A DNA stretch of 64,000 nt, taken from positions 2,728,001-2,792,000 of the forward strand of contig NC_081396.1 of the NCBI RefSeq assembly GCF_030684315.1, written 5' to 3'. Under the pieces are notes generated by a model. The model saw nothing but the letters and a program-made list of their open reading frames with translations. It ran no database searches and was not told where the DNA came from. Source of the DNA: Stegostoma tigrinum. Its lineage: Eukaryota. The translations under genes and the position numbers were made by a program. Within the stretch, counting starts at the first letter, position 1; each line of letters begins with the position of its first letter. Shown one piece after another: positions 28,279 through 64,000 of the stretch.

Positions 28279-29191
28279 AGTGATAACCGGAACTGCAGAT
28301 GCTGGAAAATCCAAGATAATCAAATGTGAGGCTGGATGAACACAGCAGGCCCAGCAGCATCTCAGGAGCACAAAAGCTGACAAAAGCACTGCCCTCCAAC
28401 CCCACCACACCCGGCACCTTCCCCTGCAACCGCAGGAAATGCTACACTTTCCCCCACACCTCCTCCCTCACCCCTATCCCAGGCCCCAACATGACTTTCC
28501 ATATTAAGCAGAGGTTCACCTGCACATTTGCCAATGTCGTATACTGCATCCATTGTACCCAGTGTGGCTTCCTCTACATTGGGGAAACCAAGCGGAGGCT
28601 TGGGGGCTGCTTTGCAGAACACCTCCACTCGGTTCGCAATAAACAACTGCACCTCCCAGTCGCAAACCATTTCCACTCCCCCTCCCATTCTTTAGATGAC
28701 ATGTCCATCATGGGCCTCCTGCAGTGCCACAATGATGCCACCCGAAGGTTGCAGGAACAGCAACTCATATTCCGCTTGGGAACCCTGCAGCCCAATGGTA
28801 TCAATGTGGACTTCACCAGCTTCAGAATCTCCCCTTCCCCCACCGCATCCCAAAACCAGCCCAGTTCATCCCTTTCCCCCCACTGCACCACACAACCAGC
28901 CCAGCCCTTCCCCTCCACCCACTGCATCCCAAAACCAGTCCAACCTGTCTCTGCCTCCCTAACCTGTTCTTCCTCTCACCCATCCCTTCCTCCCACGCCA
29001 AGCCGCACCTCCATCTCCGACCTACTAACCTCATCCCACCTCCTTGACCTGTCCATCTTCCCTGGACTGACTATCCCCTCCCTGCCTCCCCACCTATACT
29101 CTCCTCTCCACCTATCTTCTTTTCTCTCCATCTTCGGTCCGCCTCCCCGTCTCTCCCTATTTATTCCAGAACCCTCTCCCCATCCCCCTCT

Positions 29192-29219
29192 CTGATGAAG
29201 GGTCTAGGCCCGAAACGTC
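29192..29219 (+). ncRNA. Minimal hammerhead ribozyme motif (PLE family A)
   Basis: CTGATGA-A-GGGTCTAGGCCC-GAAA-CGTC; palindromic ACGT helix III; helix I weak. Confidence 0.7.
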
Positions 29220-29311
29220 AGCTTTTGTGCTCCTGAGCCTGCTGTGTTCATCCAGCCTCACATTTTATTATCTTGGATTCTCCAGCATCTGCAGTTCCCA
29301 TTATCACTGAT

Positions 29312-31258: not shown

Positions 31259-31286
31259 CTGATGAAGGGTCTAGGCCCGAAACGTC
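31259..31286 (+). ncRNA. Minimal hammerhead ribozyme motif (PLE family A)
   Basis: Identical to 29192-29219. Confidence 0.7.
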
Positions 31287-32169: not shown

Positions 32170-32310
32170 TTAGATAACAAGGTGCAGAGCTGGATGAACA
32201 TGGCAGGCCAAGCAGCATCAGAGGAGCAGGAAAGCTGACGTTTCGGGCCTGGACCCTTCTTCAGAAATGGGGCAGGGGAACGGGGTTCTGAAATAAATAG
32301 GGAGAGAGTG
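32170..32310 (-). mobile_element. Penelope family A pLTR fragment with hammerhead motif (32237-32264)
   Basis: Minus strand CTGAAGA-AGGGTCCAGGCCC-GAAACGTC. Confidence 0.8.
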
Positions 32311-45379: not shown

Positions 45380-46740
45380 GACCACTTATCCTTTACATTT
45401 TGGAGGTTCAAACCATGCATCGTTTATTCTCTTGACTTTACAGTCATCTAAAATGCTTTACTTTGACAGGTTTCAGAGTAATGATCTATCATCCATCTTC
45501 TGTCCGACAGGCAAATCATCTGTATCATATCATCGTGTAAGGTTTTCCTCCTGGCTAATTGCAATGCCACACATCTTTCACCTCATCTATGAATTGACTG
45601 ATTGAAGTTCCTATATTCATGACTAGATCATCAATATGCATCACAAACCACAAAGGATGCACCAAAATCTTGCAAAACCTCACTGGACACAAGGCTTCTT
45701 CAAAAAGGCTACCTTCTGTCATTACACTTTGCTTTCTTCCACCAAGTTGGATACAATTTCCAAAATTGTACTGGGTCCCAAGGATTTTTAACTCACTTCA
45801 GATGAAAGAGCTCATCAGAAACCTTTGTTGCCTCTTTGGAACATGGTATCAATGACGTCTGACATGATATCACTCCCAAAAATGTCATTTTGATTTTTTT
45901 TTTAAAAACTTATGTTTTCCTACTTTTAGTGAATGTCCTCTCTCTCCAATAATTTCCATTGCACTGATGCTAGACTCAATAGATTATAATGTAATTCCCC
46001 GAATGATCTTTGCAAAAATTCTTGAATCTTCACACTGGCAGACAATCAGTGCTCTGGCATTTTCTTGTTGTACATAAACAATTTGAAAATTCACACCAGG
46101 GCCCTTATAATCTATTCCCTTTCTTAGGATATTAGGGCATGTATCTTATGCAATTTTATGCCCTCGAGAACCACAAATATTTCTTTTTTCTGTCCCAATT
46201 GAACATTTTTGAATTACCACAGCATTCTTACCAGATTTATATCTCTGGTGGGGGCAGATTTAAAGTACAGGATCAAAAAACTGAAGTCTTCCAGCTCCAC
46301 CACAGCTAGCGATTCAGTTTTCAAATGGGTCCCAATCTTCCCCTCAGTATGTTCTTGTTCTTTACATATCCATGTAATGTCTTTTAACTATTCCTCTATT
46401 ATAATCACGTTTCTTTTCTTAATGAAAACAAAGCTTCCTCTTTACTTTTCTGAATTATTTTAAACAATCCCCGTGTTTTCTACTTTTTTCTTGCATTTCT
46501 GATCTTCTGAGATTGCATTATCCACCATAAATGTAGATTTTTTCCTTCTCTGATCCTTTACATTTTTCCATCTATTTTGACCTTTGGGATTTTTGCTACT
46601 CGTCTTCATCTTTCAGGAACATTTTGAATCTACAATCTCATCATTTCTCATTGGAAAAACTTCCAGTTCTCTAGTGTATGCTTTCCTGTTGGTACTTACT
46701 CCTGAACCACTTTTGTTACGTCCAGTCACATCCAATTCAA
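45380..46740 (-). mobile_element. Highly decayed CR1-like sequence
   Basis: Resembles the minus-strand CR1 fragments at 37.3-38.1 kb and 61 kb. Confidence 0.45.
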
Positions 46741-46750
46741 AACCTTTATA

Positions 46751-46842
46751 GTGAGTTTTGAGAAGATTTGTAGCTCAGGTTGAGGTTCTGAATGTGAGGT
46801 TGCTCACTGAGCTGGAAGGTTAGTTTTCAGACGTTTCGTCAC
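46751..46842 (-). mobile_element. Penelope family B pLTR, 3' part beginning at hammerhead stem II (left arm of host element)
   Basis: Minus strand gtgacgaaacgtctgaaaac...ttctcaaaactcac matches 63543-63634. Confidence 0.92.
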
Positions 46843-49800
46843 TTTTTTTTATTTGAAAAAATATACTTTAAAACATATTTACACACCTACCCAGTCATGC
46901 AAGTCGCTCCGGGTTACCCAGGGGGTACATACACCAACTAAAGGAAAAAAAACAAAGAAGGAAAAAAAAACAAAGCAGAGAAAACACCCGGCAGTCGTCA
47001 CACCGCACAGTCCCAGTTGGCCCCCTGACCAGTTGGGGAAGGCGCCAGCTGGGCCCAGTTACCAGATAGGGCCCTTTTTTCTATTCTGGACGAGGGGTTT
47101 CATACGGTGGTCTTTCCCCACCGCGCCTTGGCGGCGGCTGCCCCAAGCTTTAGCGCGTCCCTCAGCACGTAGTCCTGAACCTTGGAGTGCGCCAGTCTGC
47201 AACACTCGGTCGGGGTCAATTCATTCAGCTGGCAGACCAGCAAGTTGCGGGCAGACCAAAGAGCATCTTTCACTGCATTGATGGTCCTCCAGGCGCAGTT
47301 GATGTTGGTCTCGGTGTGCGTCCCCGGAAACAGCCCGTAGAGCACGGAGTGCCGCATCACGGAGCTGCTCGGGTCGAACCTCGACAAATACCGCTGCATC
47401 CCCCTCCACACCTCCTGCGCATAGGCACACTCCAGAAGGAGGTGATCAACAGTCTCGTCCCCTCCGCAGCCACCTCGAGGGCAGCATGCGGTGGCACAGA
47501 GATTCCAGGCATGCATAAAGGATCTCACTGGCAGAGCCCCTCTCACCGCCAGCCAAGCAATGTCCTTGTGCTTGTTTGAAAGTTCTGGCGATGAGGCATT
47601 CTGCCAAACGACTTTGGCAGTCTGCGTGGGGAACCACACGACGGGATCCACCCTCTCCTTTTCCCGAAGGGTCCTAAGGATACTACGTGCTGACCACTGC
47701 CTGACGGCCTTGTGGTCAAAGGTGTTTCCCTTCAAAAATTTCTCCACGAAGGACAGGTGGTACGGGACGGTCCAACTACTCGGAGCGTTCCGCGGCAATG
47801 AGACCAGGCCCATCCTTCGCAACACCGGGGACAGGTAGAACCTCAGTAAGTAGTGACACTTGGTGTTTGCGTACTGAGGATCTACGCACAGCTTGATGCA
47901 GCCACACACAAAGGTAGCCGTCAGGGCGAGGGTGGCATTCGGTACGCCCTTTCCCCCATTTTCCAGGTCTTTGTACATGGTGTCCCTGTGGACCCGGTCC
48001 ATCCTCGACCCCCAAATGAAGTGGAAGATGTCCTGGGAGACTGCAGCAGCGCAGGCCCAGGGAATAGGCCAGTCCTGCGCCAGATACAACAGTACCGAAA
48101 GCCCCTCACACCTGACAACCAGGTTCTTACCCGCGATGGAGAGGGACCGGAGCGTCCACCTGCCCAGCTTCTGCTTCAATTTGGTGATACGCTCCTCCCA
48201 AGTCTTAGTGCACGCCCCAGCTCCACCAAACCAAATACCCAGCACCTTCATGTAGTCTGTCCTGACGGTGAAGGGGATGAAGGAGCGGTCGTCCCAGTTC
48301 CCGAAGAACATGACTTCGCTCTTACCCCGATTGACTTTGGCACCCGAGGCCAGTTCACACTGGCCGCAGATGTCCAATAGTCTACTCACCGACCGACGAT
48401 CGGTGCAGAAGACGGCGACATCATCCATGTACAGGGAGGTCTTGACCTGAAGGCCTCCGCTGCCTGGGATAGTCACACCCTTCAGGCTCACGTCCTTCCT
48501 GATGGATGCAGCGAAGGGCTCCACACAGCACACGAACAAGGCAGGAGAGAGCGGGCAGCCCTGCCTGACTCCAGATCTGACAGGAAAACTGTCCGATTCC
48601 CACCCGTTGATCGAGACTGCTCTAACGATGTTGGCGTAGAGCAGCCGGATCCAATTGCGGATGCCCTCCCCGAACCCCAATTTGGAGAGGACGTCCCTCA
48701 TGTAAGCATGAGAGATCCTGTCGAAGGCCTTCTCCTGGTCCAGGCTGATGAGCCAGGTGTCCACCCGCCTGTCCTGTACGTAGGCGATTGTATTCCTGAT
48801 GAGCGCGAGGCTCTCAGCGATCTTCCTGCCCGGCACAGCACAGGTTTGGCCAGGGAGAATCACTAACTCCAGGACAGACCTGACCCGGTTGGCTATGGCC
48901 TTGGCCAGGATTTTGTTCAAAAGTGAAATGGGACGCCAATTCTTAATTTCTTCCCTCTCCCCCTTCCTCTTGTAAATGAGGGTGATGATGCCCTTCTTCA
49001 TGGACTTGCACATTTCCCCTGCCCGAAGTGCACTATCGTACACCTCCAGCAGGTCCTGGCCGACCAGGCCCCACAGAGCGGAATACAGCTCGACTGGTAA
49101 GCCGTCACTTCCGGGAGTCCTATTCCTCTCCAAGGGCTTGAGGGCTCTGGTCAGCTCGTCCAGGTATATCGGCTGGTCCAGCCACTCCCTCGTGCCGTCG
49201 TCGAAGACCTCCATGATAGACAACAGGAATGACTCAGAGGCCGTGCTGTCTGTGGGCTTCGTGTCGGACAGTCCGGCATAGAAGGATCTGCTGATCCACA
49301 AAATGTCGGGCTGAGACGACGTCACCGAGCCATTGTCCTCCTTCAGCCGGCTAAGCACAGTGCTCTCTTTGTGCACCTTCTGAAAGAAGAAACGTGAGCA
49401 CGTCTCATCCTGCTCCACGGAGCGGACCCTGGACCGGAAGATTATCTGGGAGGCCTCCGCAGCGAAGAGCGAGGCTTGCTGGCCCCTCACCTCCCGGAGG
49501 TCCTCCATGATATCGACCCCCATCAACAGCAGAAGGAGCAGGTTCTGCACCCTTTTATGGAGTCGCGACAGCTTTCCCCGCCTCTCTCTCGCCTTCTGAA
49601 CACCCTTGAGGACAAAGAACCTCTTGATGTTCTCCTTCACCATCTCCCACCAGTCGCCCGGAGACTCAAAGAGCGGTTTCACGGTTCTCCAAACGGCGTA
49701 CTCCCTCTTAAGCTCCTTGACGTTCTCTGGGGTTGACAGAGTCGTGTTGAGCTTCTACGTCCCCTTGCTGGCCGGCTGGTCGTCCTGTAAGTGACAGTCG

Positions 49801-51202
49801 GCCAGCAGGAGGCAGTGGTCAGAGAAGATCACCAGCTTGACGCCGGTGGACCTGACCGAGAACGTCCGTGACACAAACAGGAAGTCTATCCTTGAGCGGA
49901 TAGACCCGTCTGGCCGCGACCAGGTGTACCTCCGCTGCACTCCGTCTGCAGGGGTGCTGAAGATGTTGAGCAGCTTGGCGTCCTTCACCGTGCCCATCAG
50001 GAATCTGGACGTGACGTCCAGTTGACTCCCCCCACCTGCTGTCCCCACGCTGGATCTTCCATCTGCATCAATGATGCAGTTGAAGTCTCCGCCTAGGATG
50101 ACCGGCCTGGGCGTAGCCAGCAGGGGTGGAAGCCGCTGCAGGATGGCCAACCGCTGTCCCGTACCTGCTGAGGTGCGGTATCCCGCACTCCTGCAGAAAC
50201 AGGAGGTCCGCCTTGATGGTGGTCAGGTAGGCCAACGTGGACACACATCTTGTGGTGGACCTGACACTGCGCACATTAATGCTCGCAACTCGTACCCCCA
50301 TTGTGGGCAGTGACCTCAGTACCCTCCCCAAGTCCAAGGTCCGGCCACTCCATCTGTCCCTTCATGCCCATTGCCCAGGCTAACTGCTGGACGCTCTCCG
50401 GGCTCAGGAAACAGTCCGTGCTGCCTTCCGGGTGGCATCCCCCCGTCAGGGGTGCGGAGGCAGAGGGTCCGGCTCTGGGTCAGGCTGGGGACACGCAGTT
50501 TCCTCCTTCCTGCCTGGAAGTTCCGGGGGATCCTCCAGTGCCCCAGCAGCACTTGACTGGGTGTCAGAGGGAGCCTCAGGACGCCTCCTGTCACCTGGAA
50601 GCGGGGTGCTGTTTTCCTTCTCCCTCAAGATCTTTAACTTCTGCTTCGGGTGGGCCCTCTCCGAATTCCCCTCGTCAGGGGAGCTCTTATAGCCCCCCTG
50701 TAGCTGCCTCTTCCCGCCTGATGGTTGCGGTTCCTGGGCCCGTCGACGCACCTTCCTCCTCGCTTTCCGGACTGTGGTCCACTCCCCTGGGTCGCCTGTC
50801 GTCGCCTTCATCGACTCCGGGTTGTCGGGGGGGGAGTGGAGCCTGGAGGGGCGCTTTGCTGGCCTCGGGCCCATCCTTCTGGGCTGGGCCCTCCTGCACG
50901 GCCTGGCTCTTCTGCACATTAGTGGGGTCCTTGCAGGGCCCTGGTGCCTTCCTCTCCTCCGGGGGGGGGGGGGGGGGGGGTCGCTGGCCTGCATTGCCCC
51001 TGCCGGCAACCTGGGCGTAGGTGGTCCCCCGCCGCGGGCATGCCCTCTAGAGGTGGCCCGCTTCCCCACGAAGGTTGCAGCTTTTTTCTTGTGGGCAATC
51101 CTTTGCAAGGTGTCCCTCCTCCCTGCAGTTCCTACAGATGGTGGCTTTGCAGTCGGCCGCCACGTGACCTGACCTACCACAGGCATGGCAGACTTTAGGT
51201 TG
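46843..51202 (-). mobile_element. Tx1-clade (L1 group) non-LTR retrotransposon, copy 1; 5'-truncated within ORF1, 3' end intact with A tail
   Basis: ORF2 50301->47100 (APE broken by a deletion and a stop; RT SGVRQGCPLSP/YMDD; C-terminal CxxxxC...HLLLEC); CCHC knuckles at 51030-51190; T8 at 46843-46850. Confidence 0.93.
47100..50301 (-). pseudogene. Tx1 ORF2 (APE-RT-zf), copy 1; RT part open for 860 codons
   Basis: Track ORFs 50068-50337, 49755-50150 and 47100-49682. Confidence 0.9.
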
Positions 51203-51327
51203 GTGATGTTCATCACCAACGCAGGAAATGACATCACCAACCCAAGGAAACCTAACCAGATAAATAGAAAGCGGGACATAACACCAGCGCTTCGTCAGAG
51301 GCTCACTGTTGATGTTACCTAGAATGG
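51199..51327 (+). mobile_element. Penelope family B inversion centre and right-arm pLTR up to hammerhead stem II
   Basis: Palindrome gttggtgatg-tt-catcaccaac at 51199-51220; the sequence from about 51225 to 51327 matches 63441-63543 with 8 mismatches in about 103 nt. Confidence 0.92.
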
Positions 51328-51539
51328 GACTGATTATCTGGCAACAAACCTTCCAGCTCAGTGAGCCAGCTTACTTCAGGAACAAAATAAAGACCCACTC
51401 TCTTGTGGCCCGAGAGGAGGACAGTGCTGTGTTGGAGGTGAAAGGAGGACGTCGGGTTGGCTGTGCACCCTTGCAACCAGTGGATCTTAATGCTGGCTTC
51501 GGCCTAACGCTGGTTCAGAGGAGCAGCCAACCTGCAACG

Positions 51540-53007
51540 ATGGCTGCAGCAAGTGCTCGTGCCCCAGGTCAAGGGATCCGGAACACCATCCGTGTTTCCG
51601 TAAAGAAGGTGGATGAGGGTGCACCTGTGGACCGCACCTTCTTTGTGAAGAGGATCCTGTTGGACTGTTGTGGGTTCTCTGCTGCAGACATTTACTGCCT
51701 GCAGGATTTCCCCCGAGGGGGTTTTTACGACGTGACCTTCAGGAGTGCCAAGCTTTGCGAGCGCTTCCTGGAGGTTTTCGAGGAGAAAGGAGGTGAGGGC
51801 CCCCTCTCTGTATTGACCGCTGTCCCGCTGTTTGTGATGCCAGCGCAGAGGAGCCGTATGGTGACTGTAAACATGTACAACCCGCATGTGCCAGCATTTG
51901 ATGTCCTGACCTTCCTTGGAAGGTACGTGAAGGTGGAAGGGGACCTAACTGACTTCATGGACCCCTTTGGCATCTGGACCAGTAAGAGGCAAGTCAGGGT
52001 GACGCTGAGGATGGGCGCGGACAGGAACATTGTACACCCACTGTCCAGCTTCGCGATCGGCGGGAGTAAGGGCTACCTGACCTACGCAGGGCAACCTAAA
52101 GTCTGCCATGCCTGTGGTAGGTCAGGTCACGTGGCTGCTGACTGCAAAGCCACCATCTGCAGGAACTGCAGGGAGGAGGGACACCTTGCAAAGGATTGCC
52201 CACAAGAAAAAAGCTGCAACCTTCGTGGGGAAGCAGGCCACCTCTATAGGGCATGCCTGCGGCGGGGGACCACCTACACTCAGGTCGCCAGCAGGGACAA
52301 TGCGGGGCTAGCCTGCCCAGAGGAGAGGAAGGCACCAGGGCCCAGCAAGGACCCCACTAATGTGCAGGAGGGCCACGTTGTGCGGGAGGGCCCAGCCCCG
52401 CAGGATGGGCCCGAGGCCAGCAAAGCGCCCCTGCAGGCTCCGCTCCCCCCTCCCCGACAAGCCGGAGTTGATGGAGGTGGCGACAGGTGACCCAGGGGAG
52501 TGGATGACAGTCTGGAAAGCGAGGAGGAAGGCGAGTCGGCGGGCCCAGGAACCACAACCATCAGGCGGGAAGAGGCAGCTACAGGGGGGCTATAAGAGCT
52601 CCTCTGACGAGGGAGATTTGGAGGGGGCCCACCCGAAGCAGAAGCTAAAGATCTCAAGGGAGAAGGAAGGCAGCACCCTGCTTCCAGGTGACGGGAGGCA
52701 TCCTGAGGCTCCATCCAACACCCAGCCATGTGCCACTGGGGCCCTGGAGGGCCACCCGGACCTTCCAGGCACGAAGGAGGAAACTGCGCGCCCCCAGCCT
52801 GACCCAGAGCCGGACTCTCCTGCCTCCGTACCCCCGATGGGGGGATGCGACCCGGAAGGCAGCACGGACGGTTTCCTGAGCCCAGAGAGCATCCAGCAGT
52901 TAGCCCGGGCAATGGGCATGAAGGGACAGATGGAGGGGCTGGACCTTGGACTTGGGGAGGGTACTGCGGTCACTGCCCACAATGGGGGTACGAGTTGCGA
53001 GCATTAA
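51540..53007 (+). pseudogene. Tx1 ORF1 (ZCCHC3-like N-terminal region plus three CCHC knuckles), frameshifted near 52450
   Basis: DIYCLQDFP..GFYDVTF, Y.GQPKVCHACGRSGHVAADC, CRNCREEGHLAKDC, CNLRGEAGHLYRAC. Confidence 0.88.
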
Positions 53008-56000
53008 TGTGCGCAGTGACAGGTCCACCGCGAGATGTGTATCCACGTTGGCCTACCTGACCACCATCAAGGCGGACCTCCTGTTTCTGCAGGAGTGCGG
53101 GATACCGCACCTCAGCAGGTACGGGAAATGGTCCGGCGCCTGGACCTGTGGGCCTTCAATCTGGTCGGGGCTAATGACTGTCGCTCCTCGGGCCTGGCTA
53201 TTCTGCTGCGGGGGCGCAACTTCACCATCTCTCAAGTTCAGGAGGTGGTGGGGGGGGGATGCCTCCTAGTGGCTGACGTCACTTACAGGAACGCTCCCCT
53301 GAGGCTGATCAACGTGTACGCCCCAGCGGTACGGAGTGAGCGGTTGGCCGTTCTGCAGCAGCTTCCACCCCTGCTGGCTACGTCCAGGCCGGTCATCCTA
53401 GGCGGAGACTTCAACTGCATCATTCAGATGGAAGATCCAGCGTGGGGACAGCAGGTGGGGGGAGTCAACTGGACGTCACGTCCAGATTCCTGATGGGCAC
53501 GGTGAAGGATGCCAAGCTGCTCAACATGTTCAGCACCCCTGCAGACGGAGTGCAGCGGAGGTACCCCTGGTCGCGGCCAGACGGGTCTATCCGCTCAAGG
53601 ATAGACTTCCTGTTTGTGTCACGGGCGTTCTCGGTCAGGTCCACCGGCGTCGTGCCGGTGTTCTTCTCTGACCACTGCCTCCTGCTGGCCGACTGTCACT
53701 TATAGGACGACCAGCTGGCCGGCAAGTGGACGTGGAAGCTCAACACGACTCTGTTGACCCCAAAGAATGTCGAGGAGCTTAAGAGGGAGTACGCCGGTTG
53801 GAGAACCGTGAAACCCCTCTTTGACTCTCCGGGCGACTGGTGGGAGACGGTGAAGGAGAACATCAAGAGGTTCTTTGTCCTCAAGGGTGTTCAGAAGGCG
53901 AGAGAGAGGCGGGGAAAGCTGTCGCGACTCCATAAAAGGGTGCAGAACCTGCTCCTTCTGCAGTTGATGGGGGTCGATGTCATGGAGGACCTCCGCGAGG
54001 TGAGGGGCCAGCAAGCCTTGCTTTTTGCCGCAGAGGCCTCTAGGATGATCTTCCGGTCCAGGGTCCGCTCCGTGGAGCAGGACGAGACGTGCTCGCATTT
54101 CTTCTTTCAGAAGGTGCACAAAGAGAGCTCTGTGCTTAGCCGGCTGAAGGAGGACAACGGCTCGGTGACGTCGTCTCAGCCCGACATTTTGAGGATCAGC
54201 AGATCCTTCTATGCCGAACTGTATGACACAAAGCCCAGGGACAGCACGGCCTCCGAGTCATTCCTGTCATCTATCACGGAGGTCTTAGATGACGGCATGA
54301 GGGAGTGGCTAGACCGGCCAATATCCTTGGATGAGCTGACCAGAGCCCTCAAGTCCTTGAAGAGGAATAAGACTCCCGGGAGTGACGGTCGAGCTGTATT
54401 CCGCTCTGCTGGAGGCATACGATAGTGCGCTTCCGGCAGGGGAAATGTGCAAGTCCATGAGGAAGGGCATCATCACCCTCATTTACAAGAGGAAGGGGGA
54501 GAGGGAAAAAATTAAGAGTTGGTGTCCCATTTCACTTTTGAAAGTGGACTACAAAATCCTGGCGAAGGTCATAGCCAACCCGGTCAGGTCTGTCCTGGAG
54601 TCGGTGATTCACCCTGACCAAACCTGTGCTGCGCCAGGCAGGAAGGTCGCTGAGAGCCTCGCGCTCATCAGGGATACGATCGCCTACGTACAGGACAGGC
54701 GGGTGGACACCTGCCTCGTCAGCCTGGACCAGGAGAAGGCCTTCGACAGGATTTCTCATGCTTACATGAGGGACGTCCTCTCCAAATTGGGGTTCGGGGA
54801 GGGCATCCGCAATTGGATCTGGCTGCTCTACGCCAACATCGTTAGCGCAGTCTCGATCAACGGGTGGGAATCGGACAGTTTTCCTGTTAGATCTGGAGTC
54901 AGGCAGGGCTGCCCGCTCTCTCCTGCCTTGTTCGTGTGCTGTGTGGAGACCTTCGCCGCATCCATCAGGAAGGACATGAGCCTGAAGGGCGTGATTATCC
55001 CAGGCAGCGGAGGCCTTCAGGTCAAGACCTCCCTGTACATGGACGACATTTCCATCTTCTGCTCCGATTGTCGGTCGGTGAGTAGGCTGTTGGACATCTG
55101 CGGCCAGTTTGAACTGGCCTCGGGTGCCAAAGTCAATAGGGGTAAGAGCGAAGTCATGTTCTTCGGGAACTGGGACGACCGCTCCTTCATCCCCTTCACC
55201 GTCAGGACAGGCTACATGAAGGTGCTGGGTGTTTGGTTCGGTGGAGCTGGGGCATGCACTAAGACTTGGGAGGAACGTATCACCAAACTGAAGCAGAAGC
55301 TGGGCAGGTGGATGCTCCGGTCTCTCTCCATCGCGGGTAAGAACCTGGTTGTCAGGTGCAAGGGGCTTTCGGTACTGTTGTGTGTGGCGCAGGCCTGGCC
55401 TATTCCCTGGGCCTGCGCTGCTGCAGTCTCCCGGGCCATCTTCCACTTCATTTGGGGGTCGAGGATGGACCGGGTCCACAGGGACACCATGTACAAAGAC
55501 CTGGAAAATGGTGGAAAGGGTGTACCGAACGCCACCCTCGCCCTGACGGCTACCTTTGTGTGTGGCTGCATCAAGCTGTGCGTAGATCCTCAGTACGCAA
55601 ACACCAAGTGTCACTACTTACTGAGGTTCTACCTGTCCCCGGTGTTGCGAAGGATGGGCCTGGTCTCATTGCCGCGGAACGCTCCGAGTAGTTGGACCAT
55701 CCTGTACCACCTGTCCTTCGTGGAGAAATTTTTGAAGGGAAACACCTTTGACCACAAGGCCGTCAGACAGTGGTCAGCACATAATATCCTCGAGACCCTT
55801 CGGGAAAAGGAGAGGGTGGATCCCGTTGTGTGGTTCCCCACGCAGACTGCCAAAGTCGTTTGGCAGAATGCCATGTCGCCAGAACTTTCAAACAATCACA
55901 AGGACATTGCTTGGCTGGTGGTGATAGGGGCTCTGCCAGTGAGATCCTTTATGCATGCCCGGAATCTCTGCGCCACCGCATGCTGCCCTCGAGGTGGCTG

Positions 56001-56168
56001 CGGAGGGGACGAGACTGTCGATCGCCTCCTTCTGGAGTGTGCCTATGCGCAGGAGGTCTGGAGGGGAATGCAGTGGTATTTGTCGAGGTTCGTCCAGAGC
56101 AGCTCAGTGACGCGGGATTCCGTGTTCTATGGGCTGTTTCCCGGGATGCGCACCGAGACCAACATCAG
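52982..56168 (+). pseudogene. Tx1 ORF2 (APE-RT), copy 2, multiple frameshifts
   Basis: VASINVR, FLQECG, LGGDFNC, SRIDF, SDHC, DQEKAFDR and YMDD motifs. Confidence 0.9.
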
Positions 56169-56849
56169 CTTTTGTTAAATAAAATCAATACATTTCCAAC
56201 AGGCTGCAGGGCGCCTCGAACTGGTGTTAATGCAGTAACTCCCCATAGAAACCCCAATTTTTTGCTTGCTCTTGCATCAATAGCATTTGTGGCTATTCCA
56301 GAATTAATCGTTTCCCAGATACGTTTGACGATGCAATGTTGAAGCTGTTGTATTTTGTACCCAACGAGTGGTCAGTCGGGTGCACATCTGCTAAATCCAA
56401 CCTTTGCAACAGATAGTGGTTGCTTTTCAGTCAGTTTTCAAATTACATCTCAGCTTGTCCTGTACCTCTGTTAAAAATCCTCTTCCAGTGGATATATCAT
56501 GCAAACTTAATCACCATCCAACTCAACGGTTATTAGTTGTCATGCCAGAAAAGACGAAAGCAATTTGCCAAAAAGGGTGTCACTAGACTCGAAATGTTAA
56601 CTTTGCCTTCTCTCTACAGGGGCTGCGAGACCTGTTGAGTTTCTTCAGCAATTTTTGTTTTTATTTCAAGTTTCTGTCATTCAAAGTGTGTTGTTTGATT
56701 TTTTTTAAGTGTTCTGCTGTCAGGTGAAACAACTTAAGTTATTTGAAGGGACAATTATTTTAATGTATTAAGAAAATTAAATGATATTTAATATCAGGGA
56801 ATGATTGAAGGTGAGTGACCTGCCTCGAACCGTCATTTCAGAAAAACTG

Positions 56850-57840
56850 TGCTGGGATCACAACTTTACAATTTGTACATTAATGATCTTGGCGAAGGAA
56901 CTGTGGGAAATCTGGCTAAATTTGCAGATGATACAAAGACAGGTGGAGTGACAGGTAGAATTAAGGAAGTGGTCAGGATTCAGAAGGACTTGGGCTGGTT
57001 AGGAAAGTGGGAAAAGAAGTGGCAGATGGAGTACAACGTGGGAAAGTGTGAGGTCATGCACTTTGGGAAGAAGAACAAAAGCATGGGCCATTTTCTAAAT
57101 GAGGAGAAAACTCAGAAGTCTGAACTGCAAAGAGCCTTGACGGTTCCAGTGTAGGATTCTCTCAAGATAAAATTGCGAGTTGAGTCAGTAGTCAGGGAGG
57201 CAAATGCAATGTTGGCATTTATTTTGGGAGGACTTGAATATAAGAGCAGGGATGTACTACTGAGGCTTTGTAAGGCTCTTGTCAGGTCATATCGGAGTGT
57301 TGCGTGCTATTTTGGATCCCACATCACAGGAAGGACATACAGGCACTGAGGCAGGTTCAGAGGAGGTTCATGAGAATATTCCCAGAAACGGAAAGCACAA
57401 CACGAGGAAAGTTTGATGATTCCGGGACCATACTCATTGGAGTTCAGAAAGACGAGGGGGTGATCTAATTTAAACTTTCAAAATGCCGAATGGCCCCGAC
57501 AAATTGGACGTTTGGAAGGTGCTTCCATTGGTAGGAGAGTCTAGGACGCGAGGGCACAACCTTCGTGTAAAGGGGAGACCATTTAGAACGGACATAAGGA
57601 GAAACTTCTTCAGCCAGAGACTGGTGAATCTATGGAATTAATTGTCACAGAAGGCTGTGGAGGCCAGGTCACTGAGTACATTTAAGACTGAGATAGATAG
57701 ATTCTTGATTATCAAGGGGATCAAGGGTGACAGGGAGAAAGCAGGAGAATGGGATTGAAGAATTTATCAGCCATAAATAAATAGGAGAGCAGACTCGATG
57801 GGCCGAATGGCCTAATTTCTGCTCCTATGTCTTGTGGTCT
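56850..57840 (+). mobile_element. CR1 LINE RT and 3' end
   Basis: YINDL, AKFADDTK and KWQMEYNVGKCEVMHFG; tail ...gctcctatgtcttgtggtct. Confidence 0.9.
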
Positions 57841-59524
57841 TTGGAAAGTAAAGGTCTTTAGCAGTGAATTCACCGTCACTGGGTTTCAATCAATTACACA
57901 GAAGTGTAATATTTGCTCAGGTGCCTCAGAAATGAGAGCATTGACTTACTAGTTTCAGACACTGCACTTCAGTGACAAACAAGAGACTGTAAAATGTTTA
58001 TTAAGAAGTTTTCCCCACCATTGATAGCATAACGAATAACACATTGGTAGGAAGATGAAGAACAGGAATAGGGCATTGAGCCCTTCGAGTTGTTCCACTA
58101 TTTGATTTGATCATAATGGATCGAACAGTTAACTCCATAGGTCTGCTTGTAGCAAAAATCTTTAGCACCTTTGATTAACAAAGGAAATCTGTTCCAGATT
58201 TAATGATTCGATTGCACATAACAAGGACAGACAGTATTTCTGGAAGATGTTACGTGAATTATAATAAGTGACACAATGAAGTTGTTAGTAATTGCTAATA
58301 AAAATAGACTTTAACTCTATGACATTTTCCAATTCAAACATCCCAATCAAGTTGATCAGATCCCCTTAATTTAAGATTATGTTTCTTTATTCCAAAGAAG
58401 TTTAATATATTACTTCTGTGCTCAAAATGAGGAAAACTTCATTCTCACTGTATGGTGAAAAAATAGCTCTGTCAGTTCGGAGAAAACACGCAGAAAGAAA
58501 CCATTCAGCACGTCATCCCTGTATGGACACACATCAAGTACCTCAAAAAATGTTTCAATTCTACCAGTGGTCATTTGCGTTTCTACACAGCATGAAAGTG
58601 TCAGAACTCTTACATCTCATTGAGAAGCTAGTCGTCATCAGCCTACTTGAATTGCTAAGGTTCACGCAGTATTAGCACATCCTCGGCACTGTTCGGAAGC
58701 AAATTCCACAGTTGTGATCCAGAAAAAAAAGTAGAGGGACAGTGAAATAATTACAAGTCAAGATAGAGTATGATTTGGACGAAATCTTTCTAGGTGAAGT
58801 ACTAATATGCCTGTGAGCCCTTGTTCTCAAAGGCCCCAGTTTTGGGATGCGCTGACGAAGGACAATGTGAACTTACAAATTAGAAGCCGAGAAAATACAC
58901 CATGGCTCCTCAAGAACGCTATTCCTTTCGTGAGATCATCATAAATCTTGCTGTTCGACAAACTTTCCAAATCCAATGAAATTTAACCCGATTTTTCAGT
59001 GTTCAACTCGAGAATGGTGAACACGGAGTTCGAAAATGAGCTAGTGGTGGGAGTTAGAGTGATATTGTAGTAGAGTGTTCGCTGGCAGGATGTGATGTGT
59101 TGAGCGACTGCTAGGTAATCTCGCATACACATAGTCTGGCAGGGTGGCATTAGAGTAAATGATTAAGGTCACAAGGAACTAGTTTTGTCGAGTGGTGCTT
59201 GGTAGGTGAGGAGTAGTTTGAACTGAAATGCAGGAGGTGATTGGGTGCAAAGCTAGTTAGTTAGTTCGGCAGGGAGCTGGGCTGGTTCGGTGATAGAAGT
59301 TCACTGTAGTGAAGTGGCAGCTGGATATGATCTGAAAATGAAATGGAGTTTGGCTACGTAGCAGGCAATAAAGAATTGATTGCAAGAGAAGGAGGTTGCA
59401 ATGTGTACAGGTTGACTTGAATAAGATGAGAGGGAAGTGATCTAGGACTGGTGTCTTGTCTGGGAAGTTTAGTCCTGTCAGCGGTTCTGCACATTTTATT
59501 TTTGACTTGATTTGATAAGTAAGC

Positions 59525-59655
59525 AAGGGTCACTGGACCTGAAACGTTAACTCTGATTTCTCTCCACTGATGCTGCTTGTGGCTGGGAGTTTCTGACAAT
59601 TTCTGGGTTTTTTTGCTTCTAATTTCCAGCATCCGCAATTCTTTGGTTTTTATTT
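59525..59655 (+). mobile_element. Penelope family D pLTR fragment
   Basis: agggtcactggacctgaaacgttaactct matches the 15.8-kb element; a more decayed copy lies at about 56570-56700. Confidence 0.65.
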
Positions 59656-59965
59656 CGTGAAACTTCTCCGCTCTTTCATTGTAATTCAATGAACGTGTCC
59701 ATTGGCAAAATTACTGCACAGCTACTGGTGGTGGAATCAAAGAATTCTTATTGCTAAATTATATGATAATATAATATGCTAATATTGAGGGCGTGCTTCT
59801 GAGAAAGAAACCAATAGATCATGAACAACAAATAAGAGAAAACAAAAATGAATGCAAGATATGTAGATTTTATCAGAAACAGTTTACTGCTGGGGATACA
59901 TTTGAATAACTGCTAAGGTTGAGCTAACAGAGGCTAACTTGTTCAATCGTCCATTCTTCCCCCAG

Positions 59966-60262
59966 TGACACCATCTTCCCCCACACTTTATGGCTTAACC
60001 TCATCCTGTAAACCAAGCAGCACTGATGGTTCTGTGATCTTTGGTTGTCTGGCAATGGACCATTCCCTGGACGCCACCAAGGTGACGTGGAAGAAAGAAG
60101 GGAAGCCGATCACGACTGGATTGAAGACTTATCCATCAGCGAGAAACAAGAAGGGAACTTATACCCTGAGCAGCCAGTTAACTGTGACTGAGTCAGTAGA
60201 TTGCAACAAAATCTACTGTGAAGTTCAGTACAAAGAGTCAGAGAAGAGCGTTAGAATGCCAT
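59966..60262 (+). CDS. IGHM: Immunoglobulin mu heavy-chain constant exon CH1 (cartilaginous-fish IgM type)
   Basis: Acceptor ttcttcccccag| and donor |gtaagt, 297 bp, phase 1/1; [13 protein letters not shown]...VIFGCLAMD...VTWKK...[17 protein letters not shown]...IYCEV...MP closely resembles shark C-mu-1 as I recall it. Confidence 0.9.
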
Positions 60263-60339
60263 GTAAGTGTTGTGGGAACAGAGATAAACAGAACATCTGT
60301 GATTATAAAGATGAATAGGGCATTGTTTATAACACTTTT

Positions 60340-63080
60340 CACAGAGCCATCGAGGTATACAGCACAGTAAAAAGACCTTTGGCCGACCAAATCCATGCCT
60401 ATCAGTATCAAACACTTAACTCTGCCAGTCAAATATGCCAACGCTTTCTCCATTATCTTGTATGACTTGCCATTGCAAGTGTTCATCTCAATGCTTCTTA
60501 CTTGTTGTGTTACTAGTTTCTATAAAAACACTGAGCTCCAGATTCACACCATCATCTGTTCAATTTTGTTTCCCCCGACATTCACTCTAAACCTTCTGCC
60601 CTTACCTTTGCCTGCTGCCCATTTGACATTGATCCCTCTTCTTGTTTATCCTATCTTTACCCATCATAATTCCAGGTATCTCAATCACGTTCTCCCTCAG
60701 GGTCCTCGGGTCTAAGGGAAAACGCCTGTCTGACTGACCTCATTTCATAACTAAACCGTTCAGCCCAGGCAAAATCCTCTGAAAGCTCATCAATGCTTCT
60801 ACAATATAATCACATTCCTCTCATAATGTGCATTCCTGATTTTCACACAATACTCAATATGGCCTTACCAGCGTATTACTAATTTCCAGTACCATCTGCT
60901 CGTAATTAAATTCACTGCCTCGGATAATAAAGACCAATATCCCACATACATTTTTAACTGGATCGGTGGGCATGCACAAAAAAAAAGATTTTCAGTGCTT
61001 TCCAGGGATCCTCCATTGAAATCTTAGTACCTTGCATTTTCTTCTGCCCAAGTGTATATACCTTATATGTATCAGGAATGATTTCCATTTGCCACCTCTC
61101 GCCACTTCTCAACTGTTCTACATCCTTCTTTAACCTAATGCCATCATGCTCACGGCTGACCAACTCGACAATTTTCGTTTCATCTCTGAACTTACTCACC
61201 TGCCTTCGTTCATTCAAGTCTAAATAATTTGAATGTAAAAGAAAATCAAGGCAATTAACGCTGATTCCTGCAACCCCGCATTAGACATAGACTTCCAGTT
61301 GCACAAAAGCTCCACGACCATTATCCTCTGCTACATGCCACTCAGGCAATTCTGGATCCAATTCAACAAGCTAACTCGGATTCCATTCGTCATACCTTTG
61401 CTAACATCTGCATACCTGGTTAACTCTTCGACAAATACCATCAAATTGTTTCGATATTACCCCCACCACCCACCACACCCGACATTAAGACAATGCAGGA
61501 ATTGTTGATTGACATTCCGGATGAAGACGAATTCTGCTTCTCAACTGCTTCACTAGTTAGCCTACCACTTCGCAGACATGTCGTTTCAATTGTTATCTCT
61601 TCCCCCTCCTGCATAACAGTGCCACATTGGCGGACCTACAGTCATTTGGCACAGCCCCTGTAGCCAGACAGGGATTCTAAACTGTTCCCAGTGGCCCAAT
61701 TATTTCAGTTTTCACTCTGCCCACCAGCTTGGCATACGTTACATTCACTTTGAAAATTTAACTACTTTTATTAGAACAAGAAAACACAGCAAGTTTTGTC
61801 ATCTACCCTAACTTCTTATTGTCAATCACAGCACTTCTCCATGATTTCTGTGTCCACATCATCCCTTACCTGAGTGAACACCAACATAACGCATGTAAAT
61901 CGAACACAACCGACGTCCTCTGACGCCATGCCAGTAACAACACTGTAGAACTTAATGAGAGTTACTCATTCGTAAGTTATCCTTTTCTTATGATTGAACT
62001 TGTAACATATTTTCACAGTTTCCTTTCCTTTGACTTCCACTATTCTTTCCTTTCTCTCCTATTTCCTCTGTTTCAAAAAAAAAACCCCTTGCACGTTCTG
62101 GACTTCTTGAGAGCTTGTATTGCTTTGAGTCATCAGTATTTAACATAAGCCCACCATTTTTGTTATCTTCATCGAGCTACTTTATGTCCTTTGAAGTCCA
62201 GAGCTCACTGCATGTTTGACCCCACGCTGTGTCTTAATCGCAACATGTTGTCCCTTGGCTATTCCTATTCCTTTCTTGAATATGTTCTACTGCTGTAACT
62301 CTGGGTAATCAATACATTTCGTCTTCCAGCGCAGTCTGGTCAAATCATACGAGACCTTATTAAAATTGGCATTCCCCTTTCCAGATCTTTGGTTCAGGCC
62401 CATTCCTGTCCATTTCCAGAAAAATCTGGAATCTAACAGTTTTATGATCGCTGTCTGGAAAATGCTACATCAGTGATATTTTAACCAGTTGTTCAAGATC
62501 ATGACCTAAAGTTAATTCCAGGATCACACTTTTCTTGCAAGTTCTGTGTGAAAAAGTGTTGTATTAAATACATTGTCAATTTAGAAGCTCTGTTGGGAGC
62601 ATTTTCAGAATTCTGCTCCCTCTAAATTTTTGACATGATCAATGACGGAGCTGATTTTGAAGAAGTTAAAATCCTCTTTCATCATTCCCCAATTAATTTA
62701 CACTTCTCTGAAATTTGCTTGTGTATCTGCACTTATCGATCTTACGGACATGTGGTGGAATCCATATAACTCACCCAGTCGCATGTTTGGTTTTTTTCGG
62801 TTTTTAATTACTATCTGTTTGCCCTCATTTGGGGATGTGCCCATGATTTAGTTCCTCTTCACAACTGAAAGTACCAGAATCAGCATTGTGACAGACGCCT
62901 GATCCCATTTCACGTATTCCCCTGTCTCGCCTGAAGGCTGTATATTCTGGAATTATGAACCACCAATCCCTTCCCCTCTCAATATTTCTCCGTGATATCA
63001 ATGGCACCATTGCCTCATTTCTACCACCAACTCGTTTACTTGTTAGTCAAACTACTTCCCTTAAAACGAATAGCATCCAA
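60340..63080 (-). mobile_element. Degenerate CR1 fragments downstream of the Ig exon
   Basis: VSKFRDETKI...RWQME and IPEYTAFRRDR on the minus strand. Confidence 0.7.
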
Positions 63081-63138
63081 CTTTGCTATCTCCATTTTGG
63101 ATGTGAGTTTGCTCGCTGAGCTGGAAGGTTCGTTTTCA

Positions 63139-63172
63139 GACGTTTCGTCACCATTCTAGGTAACATCGTCAG
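63139..63172 (-). ncRNA. Minimal type I hammerhead ribozyme (PLE family B)
   Basis: CTGACGA-T-GTTACC-TAGAAT-GGTGAC-GAAA-CGTC; helix I tca/tga. Confidence 0.8.
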
Positions 63173-63521
63173 TGAGCCTCCGATGAAGCGCTGGTGTTAT
63201 GTCCCGCTTTCTATGTTGATGAACATCAACGAGCCACAAAACGACATGACCCACTATCACTCGTATCCTTACATACAGATAAGGAAGGACACCACTTTGA
63301 TTGGGACAACACATTCTTCCGAAGACAAGCCAAACAGAGACATGCACGAGAATTCCTAGAAGCATGGCATTCCAACTGGAATTCCATCAACAAACACATT
63401 GACTTGGAGCCAATCTACCATCCCCTGAGAAAAAGAACAGGATATGACATTACCCACGCAAGGAAACCTAACCAGATAAATAGAAATCGGGACATAACAC
63501 CAGCGCTTCGTCGGAGGCTCA

Positions 63522-63555
63522 CTGATGATGTTATCTAGAATGGTGACGAAACGTC
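63522..63555 (+). ncRNA. Minimal type I hammerhead ribozyme (PLE family B)
   Basis: CTGATGA-T-GTTATC-TAGAAT-GGTGAC-GAAA-CGTC; helix I tca/tga extended by ggagg/cttcc. Confidence 0.8.
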
Positions 63556-64000
63556 TGAAAACGAACCTTCCAGCTCAGCGAGCAAACTCACATCCAGAAC
63601 CTCAACCTGAGCTACAAATCTTCTCAAAACTCGCTATCTCCATTTTGATTAAACTGATCTATAATTTATATGTGTTCATGACTTCCTTGCTGTATTTTGC
63701 AATTTTGGCCCTTCACACCATCCTGTTGATCTTTCTGTGTCGCTCATAGCTTCTGTCACAAACGTTGCATTATGACCATTGTAATCTTAAAGATCATATC
63801 TATAAACTACAAATAAACTTGATTTAGAAGAACTAATTACATTTGTTATCAAATTCGTCAGATAATTTGTACAATGTGTTTCTTTAAGGTCGAGATATTT
63901 TACATCCAACTCTTCTTCTAACTGTGAGTTCAAGCGAAGAAATCGAGAGAACCAAAATTGCAACCCTCGTCTGTTCAATCACAGAATTCCATCCTAAGCA

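What the first reader, a model, noticed from the sequence alone, without database searches (positions are those of the whole stretch)
46751..56168. Candidate Tx1 retrotransposon that inserts site-specifically into the hammerhead ribozyme of a Penelope element
Seen: the empty family B pLTR (63522-63555) reads CTGATGA-T-GTTATC-TAGAAT-GGTGAC-GAAACGTC. Tx1 copy 1 (minus) ends in an A tail joined directly to GTGACGAAACGTC (junction 46842/46843). Tx1 copy 2 (plus) starts right after GTTACCTAGAATG(G) (junction about 51326-51327). A 3' and a 5' junction of two copies, in the two inverted arms of one PLE, therefore map to the same position (TAGAATG|GTGAC, within 1 nt) in stem II and in the same orientation relative to the ribozyme. 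Established: Tx1-clade elements often have sequence-specific APE endonucleases (Tx1L into its host transposon, Keno into U2 snRNA, Mutsu into 5S rRNA, Dewa into tRNA arrays, Kibi/Koshi into microsatellites), and PLE pLTRs carry minimal hammerheads. Inference: this family uses the conserved multicopy ribozyme as its target and disables it on insertion. I do not know of a described PLE-hammerhead-targeting Tx1 family but cannot search for one.
Basis: partly seen in the sequence, partly recalled or inferred. Interest (0 to 1): 0.92.

Follow-up and report, generated by a model that had tools for sequence, protein, structure and literature searches.

The report
LINE inside a Penelope hammerhead motif
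Two decayed copies of a shark Tx1-like jumping gene sit at exactly the same nucleotide inside the small ribozyme motif of another jumping gene (a Penelope-like element), which probably means this LINE family homes in on that site, although this window alone cannot prove it.

Summary
Copy 1 (minus, 46843-51202) ends in AAATAAAAAAAA joined to GTGACGAAACGTC. Copy 2 (plus, 51327/8-56170) starts right after GTTACCTAGAATGG. Both breaks map within 1 nt to TAGAATG|GTGAC of the two uninterrupted sites (63522-63555 +, 63139-63172 -). The host sequence is the 3' end of a canonical RT plus GIY-YIG Penelope-like element. Its motif fits the published minimal hammerhead, although Rfam scores nothing there.

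The two junctions are complementary (one 3', one 5'). The copies look equally old and lie head to head, as Penelope insertions typically do. They may therefore be the two ends of one insertion, later duplicated.

Four things favour real target specificity:
- The nick site (GTCAC^CATTC) is not T-rich.
- The element's first 56 nt are an old, 72% identical copy of the target's downstream part.
- There are weak signs of purifying selection.
- Contigs from same-species runs show no visible pile of foreign flanks.

First-stage notes report the same arrangement at about ten other places in this genome; I could not check them. No tool gave me other copies, so the flank table is still missing. If confirmed, this is a new member of the known class of transposon-targeting Tx1 elements.

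The parts
46748..46842 (-). Downstream half of the Penelope-like element (family B) 3' end: GTGACGAAACGTC... up to the element's 3' terminus
   Evidence: 94.7% identical to 63543-63637. Similarity ends at the same point in both copies.
46843..46854 (-). 3' end of Tx1-like copy 1: AAATAAAAAAAA (AATAAA overlapping an 8-A tail)
   Evidence: Read directly. Loose ends of 96 contigs at 46842 mark the exact break.
46843..51202 (-). Tx1-like LINE copy 1. It is 5'-truncated inside ORF1 and has private deletions of 211 nt (at 50156) and 9 nt (at 48916).
   Evidence: Aligns to copy 2 at 52092-56170 with 93.5% identity. Family contigs continue beyond 51202.
47100..49682 (-). Open 860-codon part of ORF2 of copy 1 (reverse transcriptase and zf-RVT)
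   Evidence: Pfam RVT_1 E 1.2e-32, zf-RVT E 2.6e-10. Matches human LINE-1 ORF2p structures at E 2e-51.
51200..51221 (.). Junction between the two arms: palindrome TTGGTGATG-TT-CATCACCAA plus a short duplicate of the following Penelope sequence
   Evidence: Read directly. A similar palindrome lies at 63215-63230.
51222..51327 (+). Upstream half of the Penelope-like element 3' end: ORF C-terminus, stop codon TAG at 51320-51322, mutated box CTGTTGA, 5' strand and loop of helix II
   Evidence: 92.5% identical to 63438-63543; translation.
51328..51383 (+). First 56 nt of copy 2: a diverged copy of the target sequence that lies downstream of the insertion point, with GAAAC replaced by TGATT
   Evidence: 72-73% identical to 63544-63600 and to 46842-46786, against 92-95% for the true flanks.
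51327..56170 (+). Tx1-like LINE copy 2. The 5' end is complete; the 3' end lacks about 454 nt.
51540..52490 (+). ORF1 of copy 2 (two ZCCHC3-type RNA-binding domains and CCHC knuckles), probably cut short by a frameshift
   Evidence: Pfam. The start MAAASA... matches a Stegostoma tigrinum protein at 90% identity. Relatives are 450-546 aa long.
53035..53493 (+). Fragment of the APE-type endonuclease of copy 2
   Evidence: Pfam Exo_endo_phos E 3e-4, below the curated cut-off. Full-length homologs carry PF03372.
54382..56178 (+). Reverse transcriptase part of ORF2 of copy 2
   Evidence: Pfam RVT_1 E 1.8e-34, zf-RVT E 1.2e-7.
63438..63640 (+). Uninterrupted Penelope-like element 3' end, with the minimal hammerhead motif at 63522-63555; the ORF C-terminus runs from about 63236
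   Evidence: The ORF fragment hits RT plus GIY-YIG proteins.
63095..63214 (-). Second uninterrupted copy, inverted, with the motif at 63139-63172
   Evidence: 95.8% identical to 63480-63599.

Best explanation
This is a Tx1-like LINE family of about 5.3-5.4 kb from an elasmobranch genome. It inserts target-specifically into the 3' end of one family of Penelope-like elements.

Proposed mechanism:
- The insertion point is TAGAATG|GTGAC, 4 nt after the Penelope stop codon. It lies in the 3' strand of helix II of the element's minimal hammerhead.
- The LINE's APE endonuclease nicks the bottom strand at 5'-GTCAC^CATTC-3'.
- The freed 3' end primes reverse transcription on the short A tail of the LINE RNA.
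- The insert separates the CUGAUGA box from GAAAC and the cleavage site, so that ribozyme copy is disabled.

The LINE carries at its own 5' end an old, diverged copy of the 56 nt that follow the insertion point. The association with this target is therefore older than these two copies.

Status of each step:
- Shown: the junctions, the identity of both elements, and the age and divergence figures.
- Inferred: endonuclease specificity.
- Open: whether the two junctions here are independent. The head-to-head pair may be two hits in an inverted Penelope pair, or one occupied unit duplicated by the Penelope machinery.
For: - Both junctions map to the same nucleotide and orientation, and contigs of the uninterrupted motif confirm this.
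- The nick site is not the T-rich site of unspecific L1-type endonucleases (read).
- Identity falls from 92.5% to 72% at the 5' junction. The target-like 5' end is therefore not a fresh target duplication; it was carried by the LINE lineage.
- Two of the four family-B sites in the window are occupied; none of the three family-A motifs is.
- Signs of coding constraint:
  - dN/dS between the copies is 0.40, against 0.60 (0.44-0.85) in a neutral simulation.
  - Family-level polymorphisms fall 5 of 7 on third codon positions, whereas changes private to copy 1 fall 8/5/6.
  - Copy 1 keeps an 860-codon open frame.
- No pile of loose ends on the LINE side of either junction appears among the best-supported rows for two runs. 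The 5' UTR is as deep as the body.
- Tx1-clade families are documented to target other transposons: piggyBac Tx1D, Mariner-N4_AMi, LTR elements and Harbinger. Some carry former target sequence at their 5' ends (PMC4494074).
- Lead only: first-stage notes report the same arrangement at about ten other places in this genome.
Against: - Only one 3' and one 5' junction were seen, on two copies of equal apparent age arranged head to head. One original insertion would explain both.
- The truncated 5' end of copy 1 is not joined to the upstream half of the target.
- The contig evidence is indirect. The loose-end list is cut to six rows per run, and de Bruijn contigs tend to stop at branch points.
- The selection signals are marginal (p about 0.02-0.05).
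- Tx1-clade membership rests on the domain set and one database name, not on a tree with reference elements.
Confidence: 0.55

Rival explanations
1. Cargo model. A single, essentially random insertion of the LINE into the 3' end of one Penelope-like element created a composite. The Penelope machinery then copied that composite, including the typical inverted 5'-truncated partner. The shared junction is inherited, not chosen by the LINE endonuclease.
For: - The head-to-head layout with a palindromic centre matches the usual Penelope insertion structure (PMC8557442).
- The left arm ends at the natural Penelope 3' terminus, and its 5' truncation lies inside the LINE.
- The copies are equally old.
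- The junctions are complementary.
- Most differences between the arms look neutral (codon positions 32/46/61).
- A first-stage note reports another palindrome with the LINE in both arms (unchecked).
Against: - The model does not explain why the LINE's own 5' end holds a much older (72%) copy of the target's downstream part.
- The LINE reading frames were largely intact at insertion, and the family shows weak signs of purifying selection. Passive cargo would not be expected to show this.
- Penelope copies are usually heavily 5'-truncated, yet depth is flat along the LINE up to its 5' UTR.
- The arms differ by 6.5%.
Confidence: 0.27
2. Chimeric-ends model. The Penelope-like stretches on both sides are part of the LINE unit itself, as captured 5' and 3' terminal modules. 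The unit then inserts anywhere, and no Penelope copy is being targeted.
For: - Summed contig depth of the flanking Penelope parts is of the same order as that of the LINE body.
- The LINE demonstrably carries one Penelope-derived stretch, the 56-nt 5' segment.
Against: - The upstream flank is the in-frame C-terminus of the Penelope ORF, with its stop codon. It begins at an arbitrary truncation point next to a fold-back palindrome, as in the empty copy pair.
- AAATAAAAAAAA directly before GTGAC looks like a true LINE 3' end.
- The flanks are 92-95% identical to the empty copies, whereas the LINE-borne copy is 72% identical.
Confidence: 0.08
3. Coincidence or artefact. Either two unrelated random insertions happen to abut Penelope fragments, or the 9.4-kb quasi-palindrome is a misassembly.
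For: Penelope inverted structures are known to disturb assemblies (PMC8557442).
Against: - The break points coincide within 1 nt in a 200-nt element.
- The arms differ at 6.5% of sites and by several indels, so they are not a collapsed or mirrored assembly.
- Contigs from independent runs support the sequence on both sides.
Confidence: 0.03

Closest known systems
Tx1L of Xenopus laevis, inserted in the piggyBac-type DNA transposon Tx1D
   Same: It is an L1/Tx1-type LINE found at one fixed site of another multicopy transposon. The 'composite element or site-specific insertion' question arose there too; per PMC4494074 (citing Christensen et al. 2000) the endonuclease determines the target.
   Different: The host here is a retroelement, not a DNA transposon. 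The site lies inside a ribozyme motif. Endonuclease specificity is untested here.
Crocodilian Tx1-Mar, Tx1-8_Crp/Tx1-4_AMi and Tx1-9_AMi (targets: Mariner-N4_AMi, LTR retrotransposons, Harbinger; PMC4494074)
   Same: These are Tx1-clade families that prefer defined positions in other transposons. Some carry remnants of a former target (U1/U2 heads) at their 5' ends.
   Different: Those 5' heads come from the upstream part of an RNA-gene target. Here the 5' stretch copies the downstream part of the present target. No Penelope target is described there, and my paper searches found none.
Keno, Kibi, Koshi (Tx1 clade; U2 snRNA genes and microsatellites) and R2 in 28S rDNA
   Same: They insert target-specifically into multicopy sequences. 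R2 depends on co-transcription with its target and on a ribozyme at its 5' junction (as cited in PMC4494074).
   Different: The R2 ribozyme is its own HDV-like fold and is active. Here the insertion splits the host's hammerhead, and the junction in this copy lacks GAAAC.
Minimal hammerheads in the terminal repeats of Penelope-like elements (PMC4209133)
   Same: The motif has CUGANGA, a long helix II (6 bp) with a bulged base at its 5' end, GAAA, no helix III loop, a palindromic ACGU suited to dimer formation, and GUC before the cleavage site. It occurs singly and as close inverted pairs.
   Different: Interruption of this motif by a LINE is not described there.

Membership tests
Tx1 clade of non-LTR retrotransposons | ORF2 with an N-terminal APE-type endonuclease and an L1-like reverse transcriptase | tested here: met
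   RVT_1 and zf-RVT hits are strong. The APE hit in this window is weak (E 3e-4, below cut-off), but full-length homologs carry PF03372. Human LINE-1 ORF2p matches at E 2e-51.
Tx1 clade of non-LTR retrotransposons | ORF1 with RNA-binding domains and CCHC zinc knuckles | tested here: met
   PF23057, PF23058 and zf-CCHC.
Tx1 clade of non-LTR retrotransposons | RT domain groups with reference Tx1 elements rather than L1 in a phylogeny (RTclass1, as in PMC4494074) | not tested
   No reference Tx1 or L1 set was available. The only indication is that a Danio protein named 'transposon TX1 149 kDa protein' scores 440 bits, against 178 bits for human L1 ORF2p.
Target-specific LINE | A large share of copies is flanked by the same target sequence at the same position (over 20% in PMC4494074) | tested here: inconclusive
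   2 of 2 junctions in the window fit. Contig data show no rival flank pile, but the tables are truncated. Other copies could not be fetched.
Target-specific LINE | Independent insertions: copies with different 5' truncation points keep the same upstream target flank | tested here: not met
   The only truncated copy (5' end at 51202) abuts a palindrome and an inverted Penelope part, not ...CTAGAATG. One copy cannot decide the point.
Target-specific LINE | The endonuclease cleaves the target sequence specifically | not testable with these tools
   This needs a biochemical nicking assay.
Penelope-like element (canonical EN+) | A single ORF with RT followed by a C-terminal GIY-YIG endonuclease | tested here: met
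   Only the ORF's C-terminus lies in the window (63236-63538). It matches the C-termini of proteins that carry RVT_1 plus GIY-YIG: P0234 and P0264.
Penelope-like element (canonical EN+) | 5'-truncated copies in tandem or inverted arrangement (pseudo-LTRs) | tested here: met
   There is an inverted pair at 63095-63214 and 63438-63640, and a head-to-head arrangement at 51202/51222 (PMC8557442).
Minimal hammerhead of Penelope-like elements | Conserved core CUGANGA ... GAAA, helix II, and a cleavage triplet | tested here: met
   Both empty sites carry the core. The pattern gives 5 matches in the window against 0.14 expected. Helix II forms in the predicted fold. The criteria come from PMC4209133.
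Minimal hammerhead of Penelope-like elements | Match to a curated hammerhead covariance model | tested here: not met
   There is no Rfam hit at the gathering score or at E up to 10. This is expected, because the minimal form lacks helix III.
Minimal hammerhead of Penelope-like elements | Self-cleavage | not testable with these tools
   Published minimal forms cleave weakly and as dimers (PMC4209133).

The most novel reading that the evidence does not exclude
The LINE does not merely land in the Penelope element but exploits it. Its 5' end, a copy of the sequence that follows the insertion point, would re-create a Penelope-like terminal structure (helix I partner, promoter or ribozyme context) at the new 5' junction. 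The LINE would then be transcribed or processed from the host element's signals, and the site would stay recognisable for further insertions, giving arrays. That would be a LINE parasitising the expression and ribozyme module of another retroelement.
Probability: 0.12. Interest if true: 0.85.

Novelty: new member of a known kind. Interest (0 to 1): 0.55.

Why it matters
Target-specific LINEs show how an endonuclease can be tuned to a single sequence, and they are models for site-directed integration tools. A family aimed at the ribozyme-bearing end of Penelope-like elements would add a retroelement-in-retroelement case, in which each insertion inactivates a copy of the host element's hammerhead. 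It would also explain a recurrent, confusing structure in shark genome annotation. Rough contig depth suggests thousands of copies or more. The target-derived 5' end gives a concrete handle on how such LINEs get transcribed after landing in a foreign element.

Tried and rejected
Routes to other copies that failed:
- Exact scans for GTGACGAAACGTCTGAAAAC in metagenome and viral contigs gave 0 hits.
- Two protein searches were designed to catch peptides translated across the 5' junction, where the frame is open from the ATG in TAGAATGG into ORF1. They returned only shark ORF1 proteins that start at the canonical MA(A/T)AS.
- The single read-laying run gave truncated tables. Its many 'skip' joints carry GATC fillers and are Hi-C ligation products, not rearrangements.

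Negative results:
- Rfam found no hammerhead.
- The family-B ORF fragment shows no detectable similarity to the family-A Penelope ORF in this window. Its identity came from the 1.8-billion-protein search instead.

Readings considered and rejected:
- Twin priming of one LINE RNA: the arms overlap by 4 kb.
- The 56-nt stretch as a fresh target-site duplication: 72% against 92-95% identity.
- Assembly mirror artefact: the arms differ by 6.5% and by several indels.

Inconclusive: shared-variant analysis of the arms. 8 of 31 copy-1 differences are shared with copy 2, mostly at CpG-type sites. This does not separate the models.

Full report
**Observation**

The region holds two copies of one GC-rich LINE (55-65% GC in a 37-45% background).
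- Copy 1 lies on the minus strand from 46843 to 51202.
- Copy 2 lies on the plus strand from 51327/8 to 56170.
- They overlap over about 4 kb at 93.5% identity.
- Copy 1 is 5'-truncated inside ORF1. Its homology to copy 2 starts exactly at 51202 = 52092, and family contigs continue beyond that point.
- Copy 2 has the complete 5' end but lacks the last ~454 nt.
- On the minus strand, copy 1 ends in AAATAAAAAAAA and is followed directly by GTGACGAAACGTC.
- Copy 2 is preceded directly by GTTACCTAGAATGG.
- The two uninterrupted sites, 63522-63555 (+) and 63139-63172 (-), read ...TAGAATGGTGACGAAACGTC....
- Both breaks therefore map to TAGAATG|GTGAC within one G, in the same orientation.
- Contigs from runs of the same species confirm this independently. 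Six contigs in X14 and two in X1 join 46841 to 51327 on opposite strands. A further 96 contigs run from 46842 into CATTCTAGGTAACATCATCAG. Both patterns are the uninterrupted motif.

**What the host sequence is**

- The frame that ends at the TAG of cTAGaatgg encodes ...HFDWDNTFFRRQAKQRHAREFLEAWHSNWNSINKHIDLEPIYHPLRKRTGYDITHARKPNQINRNRDITPALRRRLTDDVI*.
- A search of 1.8 billion representative proteins gave 306 hits.
- The long hits align with their C-termini and carry RVT_1 followed by GIY-YIG: P0234 and P0264. This is the canonical architecture of endonuclease-positive Penelope-like elements.
- The so-called pLTR is therefore the 3' end of such an element. The insertion point lies 4 nt after its stop codon.
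- The motif is CUGAUGA, a bulged U, a 6-bp helix II (GUUAUC/GGUGAC) with loop UAGAAU, GAAA, the palindromic ACGU in place of a helix III hairpin, and GUC.
- It fits the minimal hammerhead described for these elements, which is thought to act as a dimer (PMC4209133).
- Helix II and a split helix I (GGAGG with CCUUCC) form in the predicted fold.
- Rfam reports nothing, even at E up to 10. 'Hammerhead' here rests on the published descriptor, not on a curated model or an assay.
- The insertion lies in the 3' strand of helix II. It separates the CUGAUGA box from GAAAC and the cleavage site.

**What the insert is**

- ORF1 has two ZCCHC3-type RNA-binding domains and CCHC knuckles.
- ORF2 has a weak APE signal in this decayed copy, a strong RT and zf-RVT.
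- Homologs: 68% identity to a cluster that includes a little skate protein; 65-74% to whale shark proteins; 43-46% to amphibian elements; 37% to a zebrafish protein named 'transposon TX1 149 kDa protein'.
- Human LINE-1 ORF2p scores far lower.
- ORF1 starts at MAAASA... and is 90% identical to a Stegostoma tigrinum protein. This hints at the source lineage.
- Tx1-clade membership is plausible but was not tested by phylogeny.

**The 5' end**

- Upstream of 51327 the flank is 92.5-93.8% identical to the empty copies.
- The next 56 nt (51328-51383) are only 72-73% identical to the sequence that follows the insertion point in empty or occupied sites. The best-kept part is AACCTTCCAGCTCAG, and GAAAC is replaced by TGATT.
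- The sharp drop shows that 51327/8 is a true boundary.
- It also shows that the target-like stretch is far older than the insertion. It is not a fresh target-site duplication; it travelled with the LINE.
- In this copy no ribozyme can be rebuilt, because the upstream box is CTGTTGA and the core GAAAC is missing.

**Are the two junctions independent?**

This is the crux, and the window does not settle it.
- The junctions are complementary (one 3', one 5').
- The copies have the same apparent age: CpG lost in copy 2 only 51 times, in copy 1 only 44 times (p 0.54); CpG o/e 0.62 and 0.61.
- The truncated 5' end of copy 1 is not joined to the upstream half of the target.
  - It is joined to a 9-nt inverted duplication, TTGGTGATG-TT-CATCACCAA, built from Penelope sequence.
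  - The plus-oriented Penelope part follows directly.
  - A similar palindrome sits at the inner edge of the empty inverted pair (63215-63230).
- Penelope insertions typically carry an inverted 5'-truncated copy next to the 5' end (PMC8557442).
- The simplest local history is therefore one occupied unit copied as a whole.
- The alternative is two hits in an inverted Penelope pair, with a microhomology-mediated deletion of about 90-105 nt at the 5' junction of copy 1.
- I reject twin priming of one RNA, because the arms overlap by 4 kb.

**Evidence bearing on target specificity at the family level**

- The bottom-strand nick site GTCAC^CATTC is not T-rich.
- The old target-derived 5' end implies a long association with this target.
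- dN/dS between the copies is 0.40 (bootstrap 0.29-0.56). A neutral simulation with the observed mutation spectrum gives 0.60 (0.44-0.85). The other two frames give 1.28 and 0.66.
- In the truncated table of family variants, sites at intermediate frequency fall 5 of 7 on third codon positions. Changes private to copy 1 fall 8/5/6.
- Copy 1 keeps an 860-codon open frame.
- These signals are weak. They fit a LINE that was replicating on its own coding capacity better than they fit passive cargo.
- In X14, 66,416 contigs were laid. Depth is flat from the 3' part to the 5' UTR. No loose-end pile on the LINE side of either junction appears among the listed rows.
- Caveats: the lists are cut, contigs break at repeats, and depth is not copy number.
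- Two of the four family-B sites in the window are occupied, and none of the three family-A motifs is.

**Earlier notes of this scan**

- First-stage readers reported a Tx1 of about 5.3-5.4 kb inside a Penelope hammerhead at roughly ten other places of this same genome.
- These include an array, a 13.8-kb palindrome and several remarks on the target-like 5' end.
- They are unchecked and I could not read those places. I use them as leads only. They fit both the targeting model and the cargo model.

**Comparison with what is known**

- Tx1-clade families that target other transposons are established: Tx1L in piggyBac Tx1D, Tx1-Mar in Mariner-N4_AMi, and others in LTR elements and Harbinger.
- Some of them keep former target sequence at their 5' ends (PMC4494074).
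- My paper searches found no description of a LINE that targets a Penelope element or its hammerhead.
- If confirmed, this is a new member of a known kind, with two unusual traits: the site lies inside a ribozyme motif, and the element carries a copy of the downstream target at its 5' end.

**Verdict**

- Confidence in the target-specific Tx1-like reading is about 0.55, in the cargo model about 0.27, and the rest goes to minor rivals.

Noticed in passing
28326-31028 (+); motifs at 29192-29216, 31259-31283 (+) and 32240-32264 (-): A second Penelope-like family ('A') has weak RVT_1 and GIY-YIG hits. Its three minimal hammerhead motifs read CTGA(T/A)GAAGGGTC(T/C)AGGCCCGAAAC, and none is interrupted.
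   Followed up: partly
51202-51217 and 63215-63230: Similar 16-nt palindromes (GGTGATGTTCATCACC and GTTGATGAACATCAAC) sit at the 5'-truncated inner edge of two separate family-B inverted structures. They may be a footprint of how these elements form inverted copies.
   Followed up: partly
51282-51539 (+): The reading frame is open from the Penelope half, including the ATG inside TAGAATGG at 51324, through the whole LINE 5' UTR into the ORF1 start at 51540. Annotated shark homologs nevertheless all start at the canonical MA(A/T)AS.
   Followed up: yes
63320-63538 (+) and 51222-51322 (+): The stop codon of the Penelope ORF lies in the loop of hammerhead helix II. Coding sequence and ribozyme motif therefore overlap.
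   Followed up: partly
50156 and 48916 (copy 1): Copy 1 has private deletions of 211 nt (in the endonuclease region) and 9 nt. Family contigs and copy 2 carry the missing letters.
   Followed up: yes
52360-53007 (+): ORF1 of copy 2 stops at 316 aa, whereas shark relatives have 450-546 aa. A frameshift near 52490 probably splits it, and the 215-aa ORF that follows may be its continuation.
   Followed up: no
12948-14501 (-) and 25305-25928 (-): These long ORFs are built of diverged internal repeats with an 84-nt period and are related to each other at about 70%. Their nature is unknown.
   Followed up: no
run X14, laid on 46600-51700: Many 'skip' joints carry GATC-containing fillers, so the run looks like a Hi-C library. 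These joints are ligation products, not rearrangements of the element.
   Followed up: partly
56171-63094: Copy 2 breaks off at 56170 into unrelated AT-richer sequence. Its last ~454 nt and the expected downstream Penelope half are nowhere in the window, so a deletion or rearrangement removed them.
   Followed up: partly
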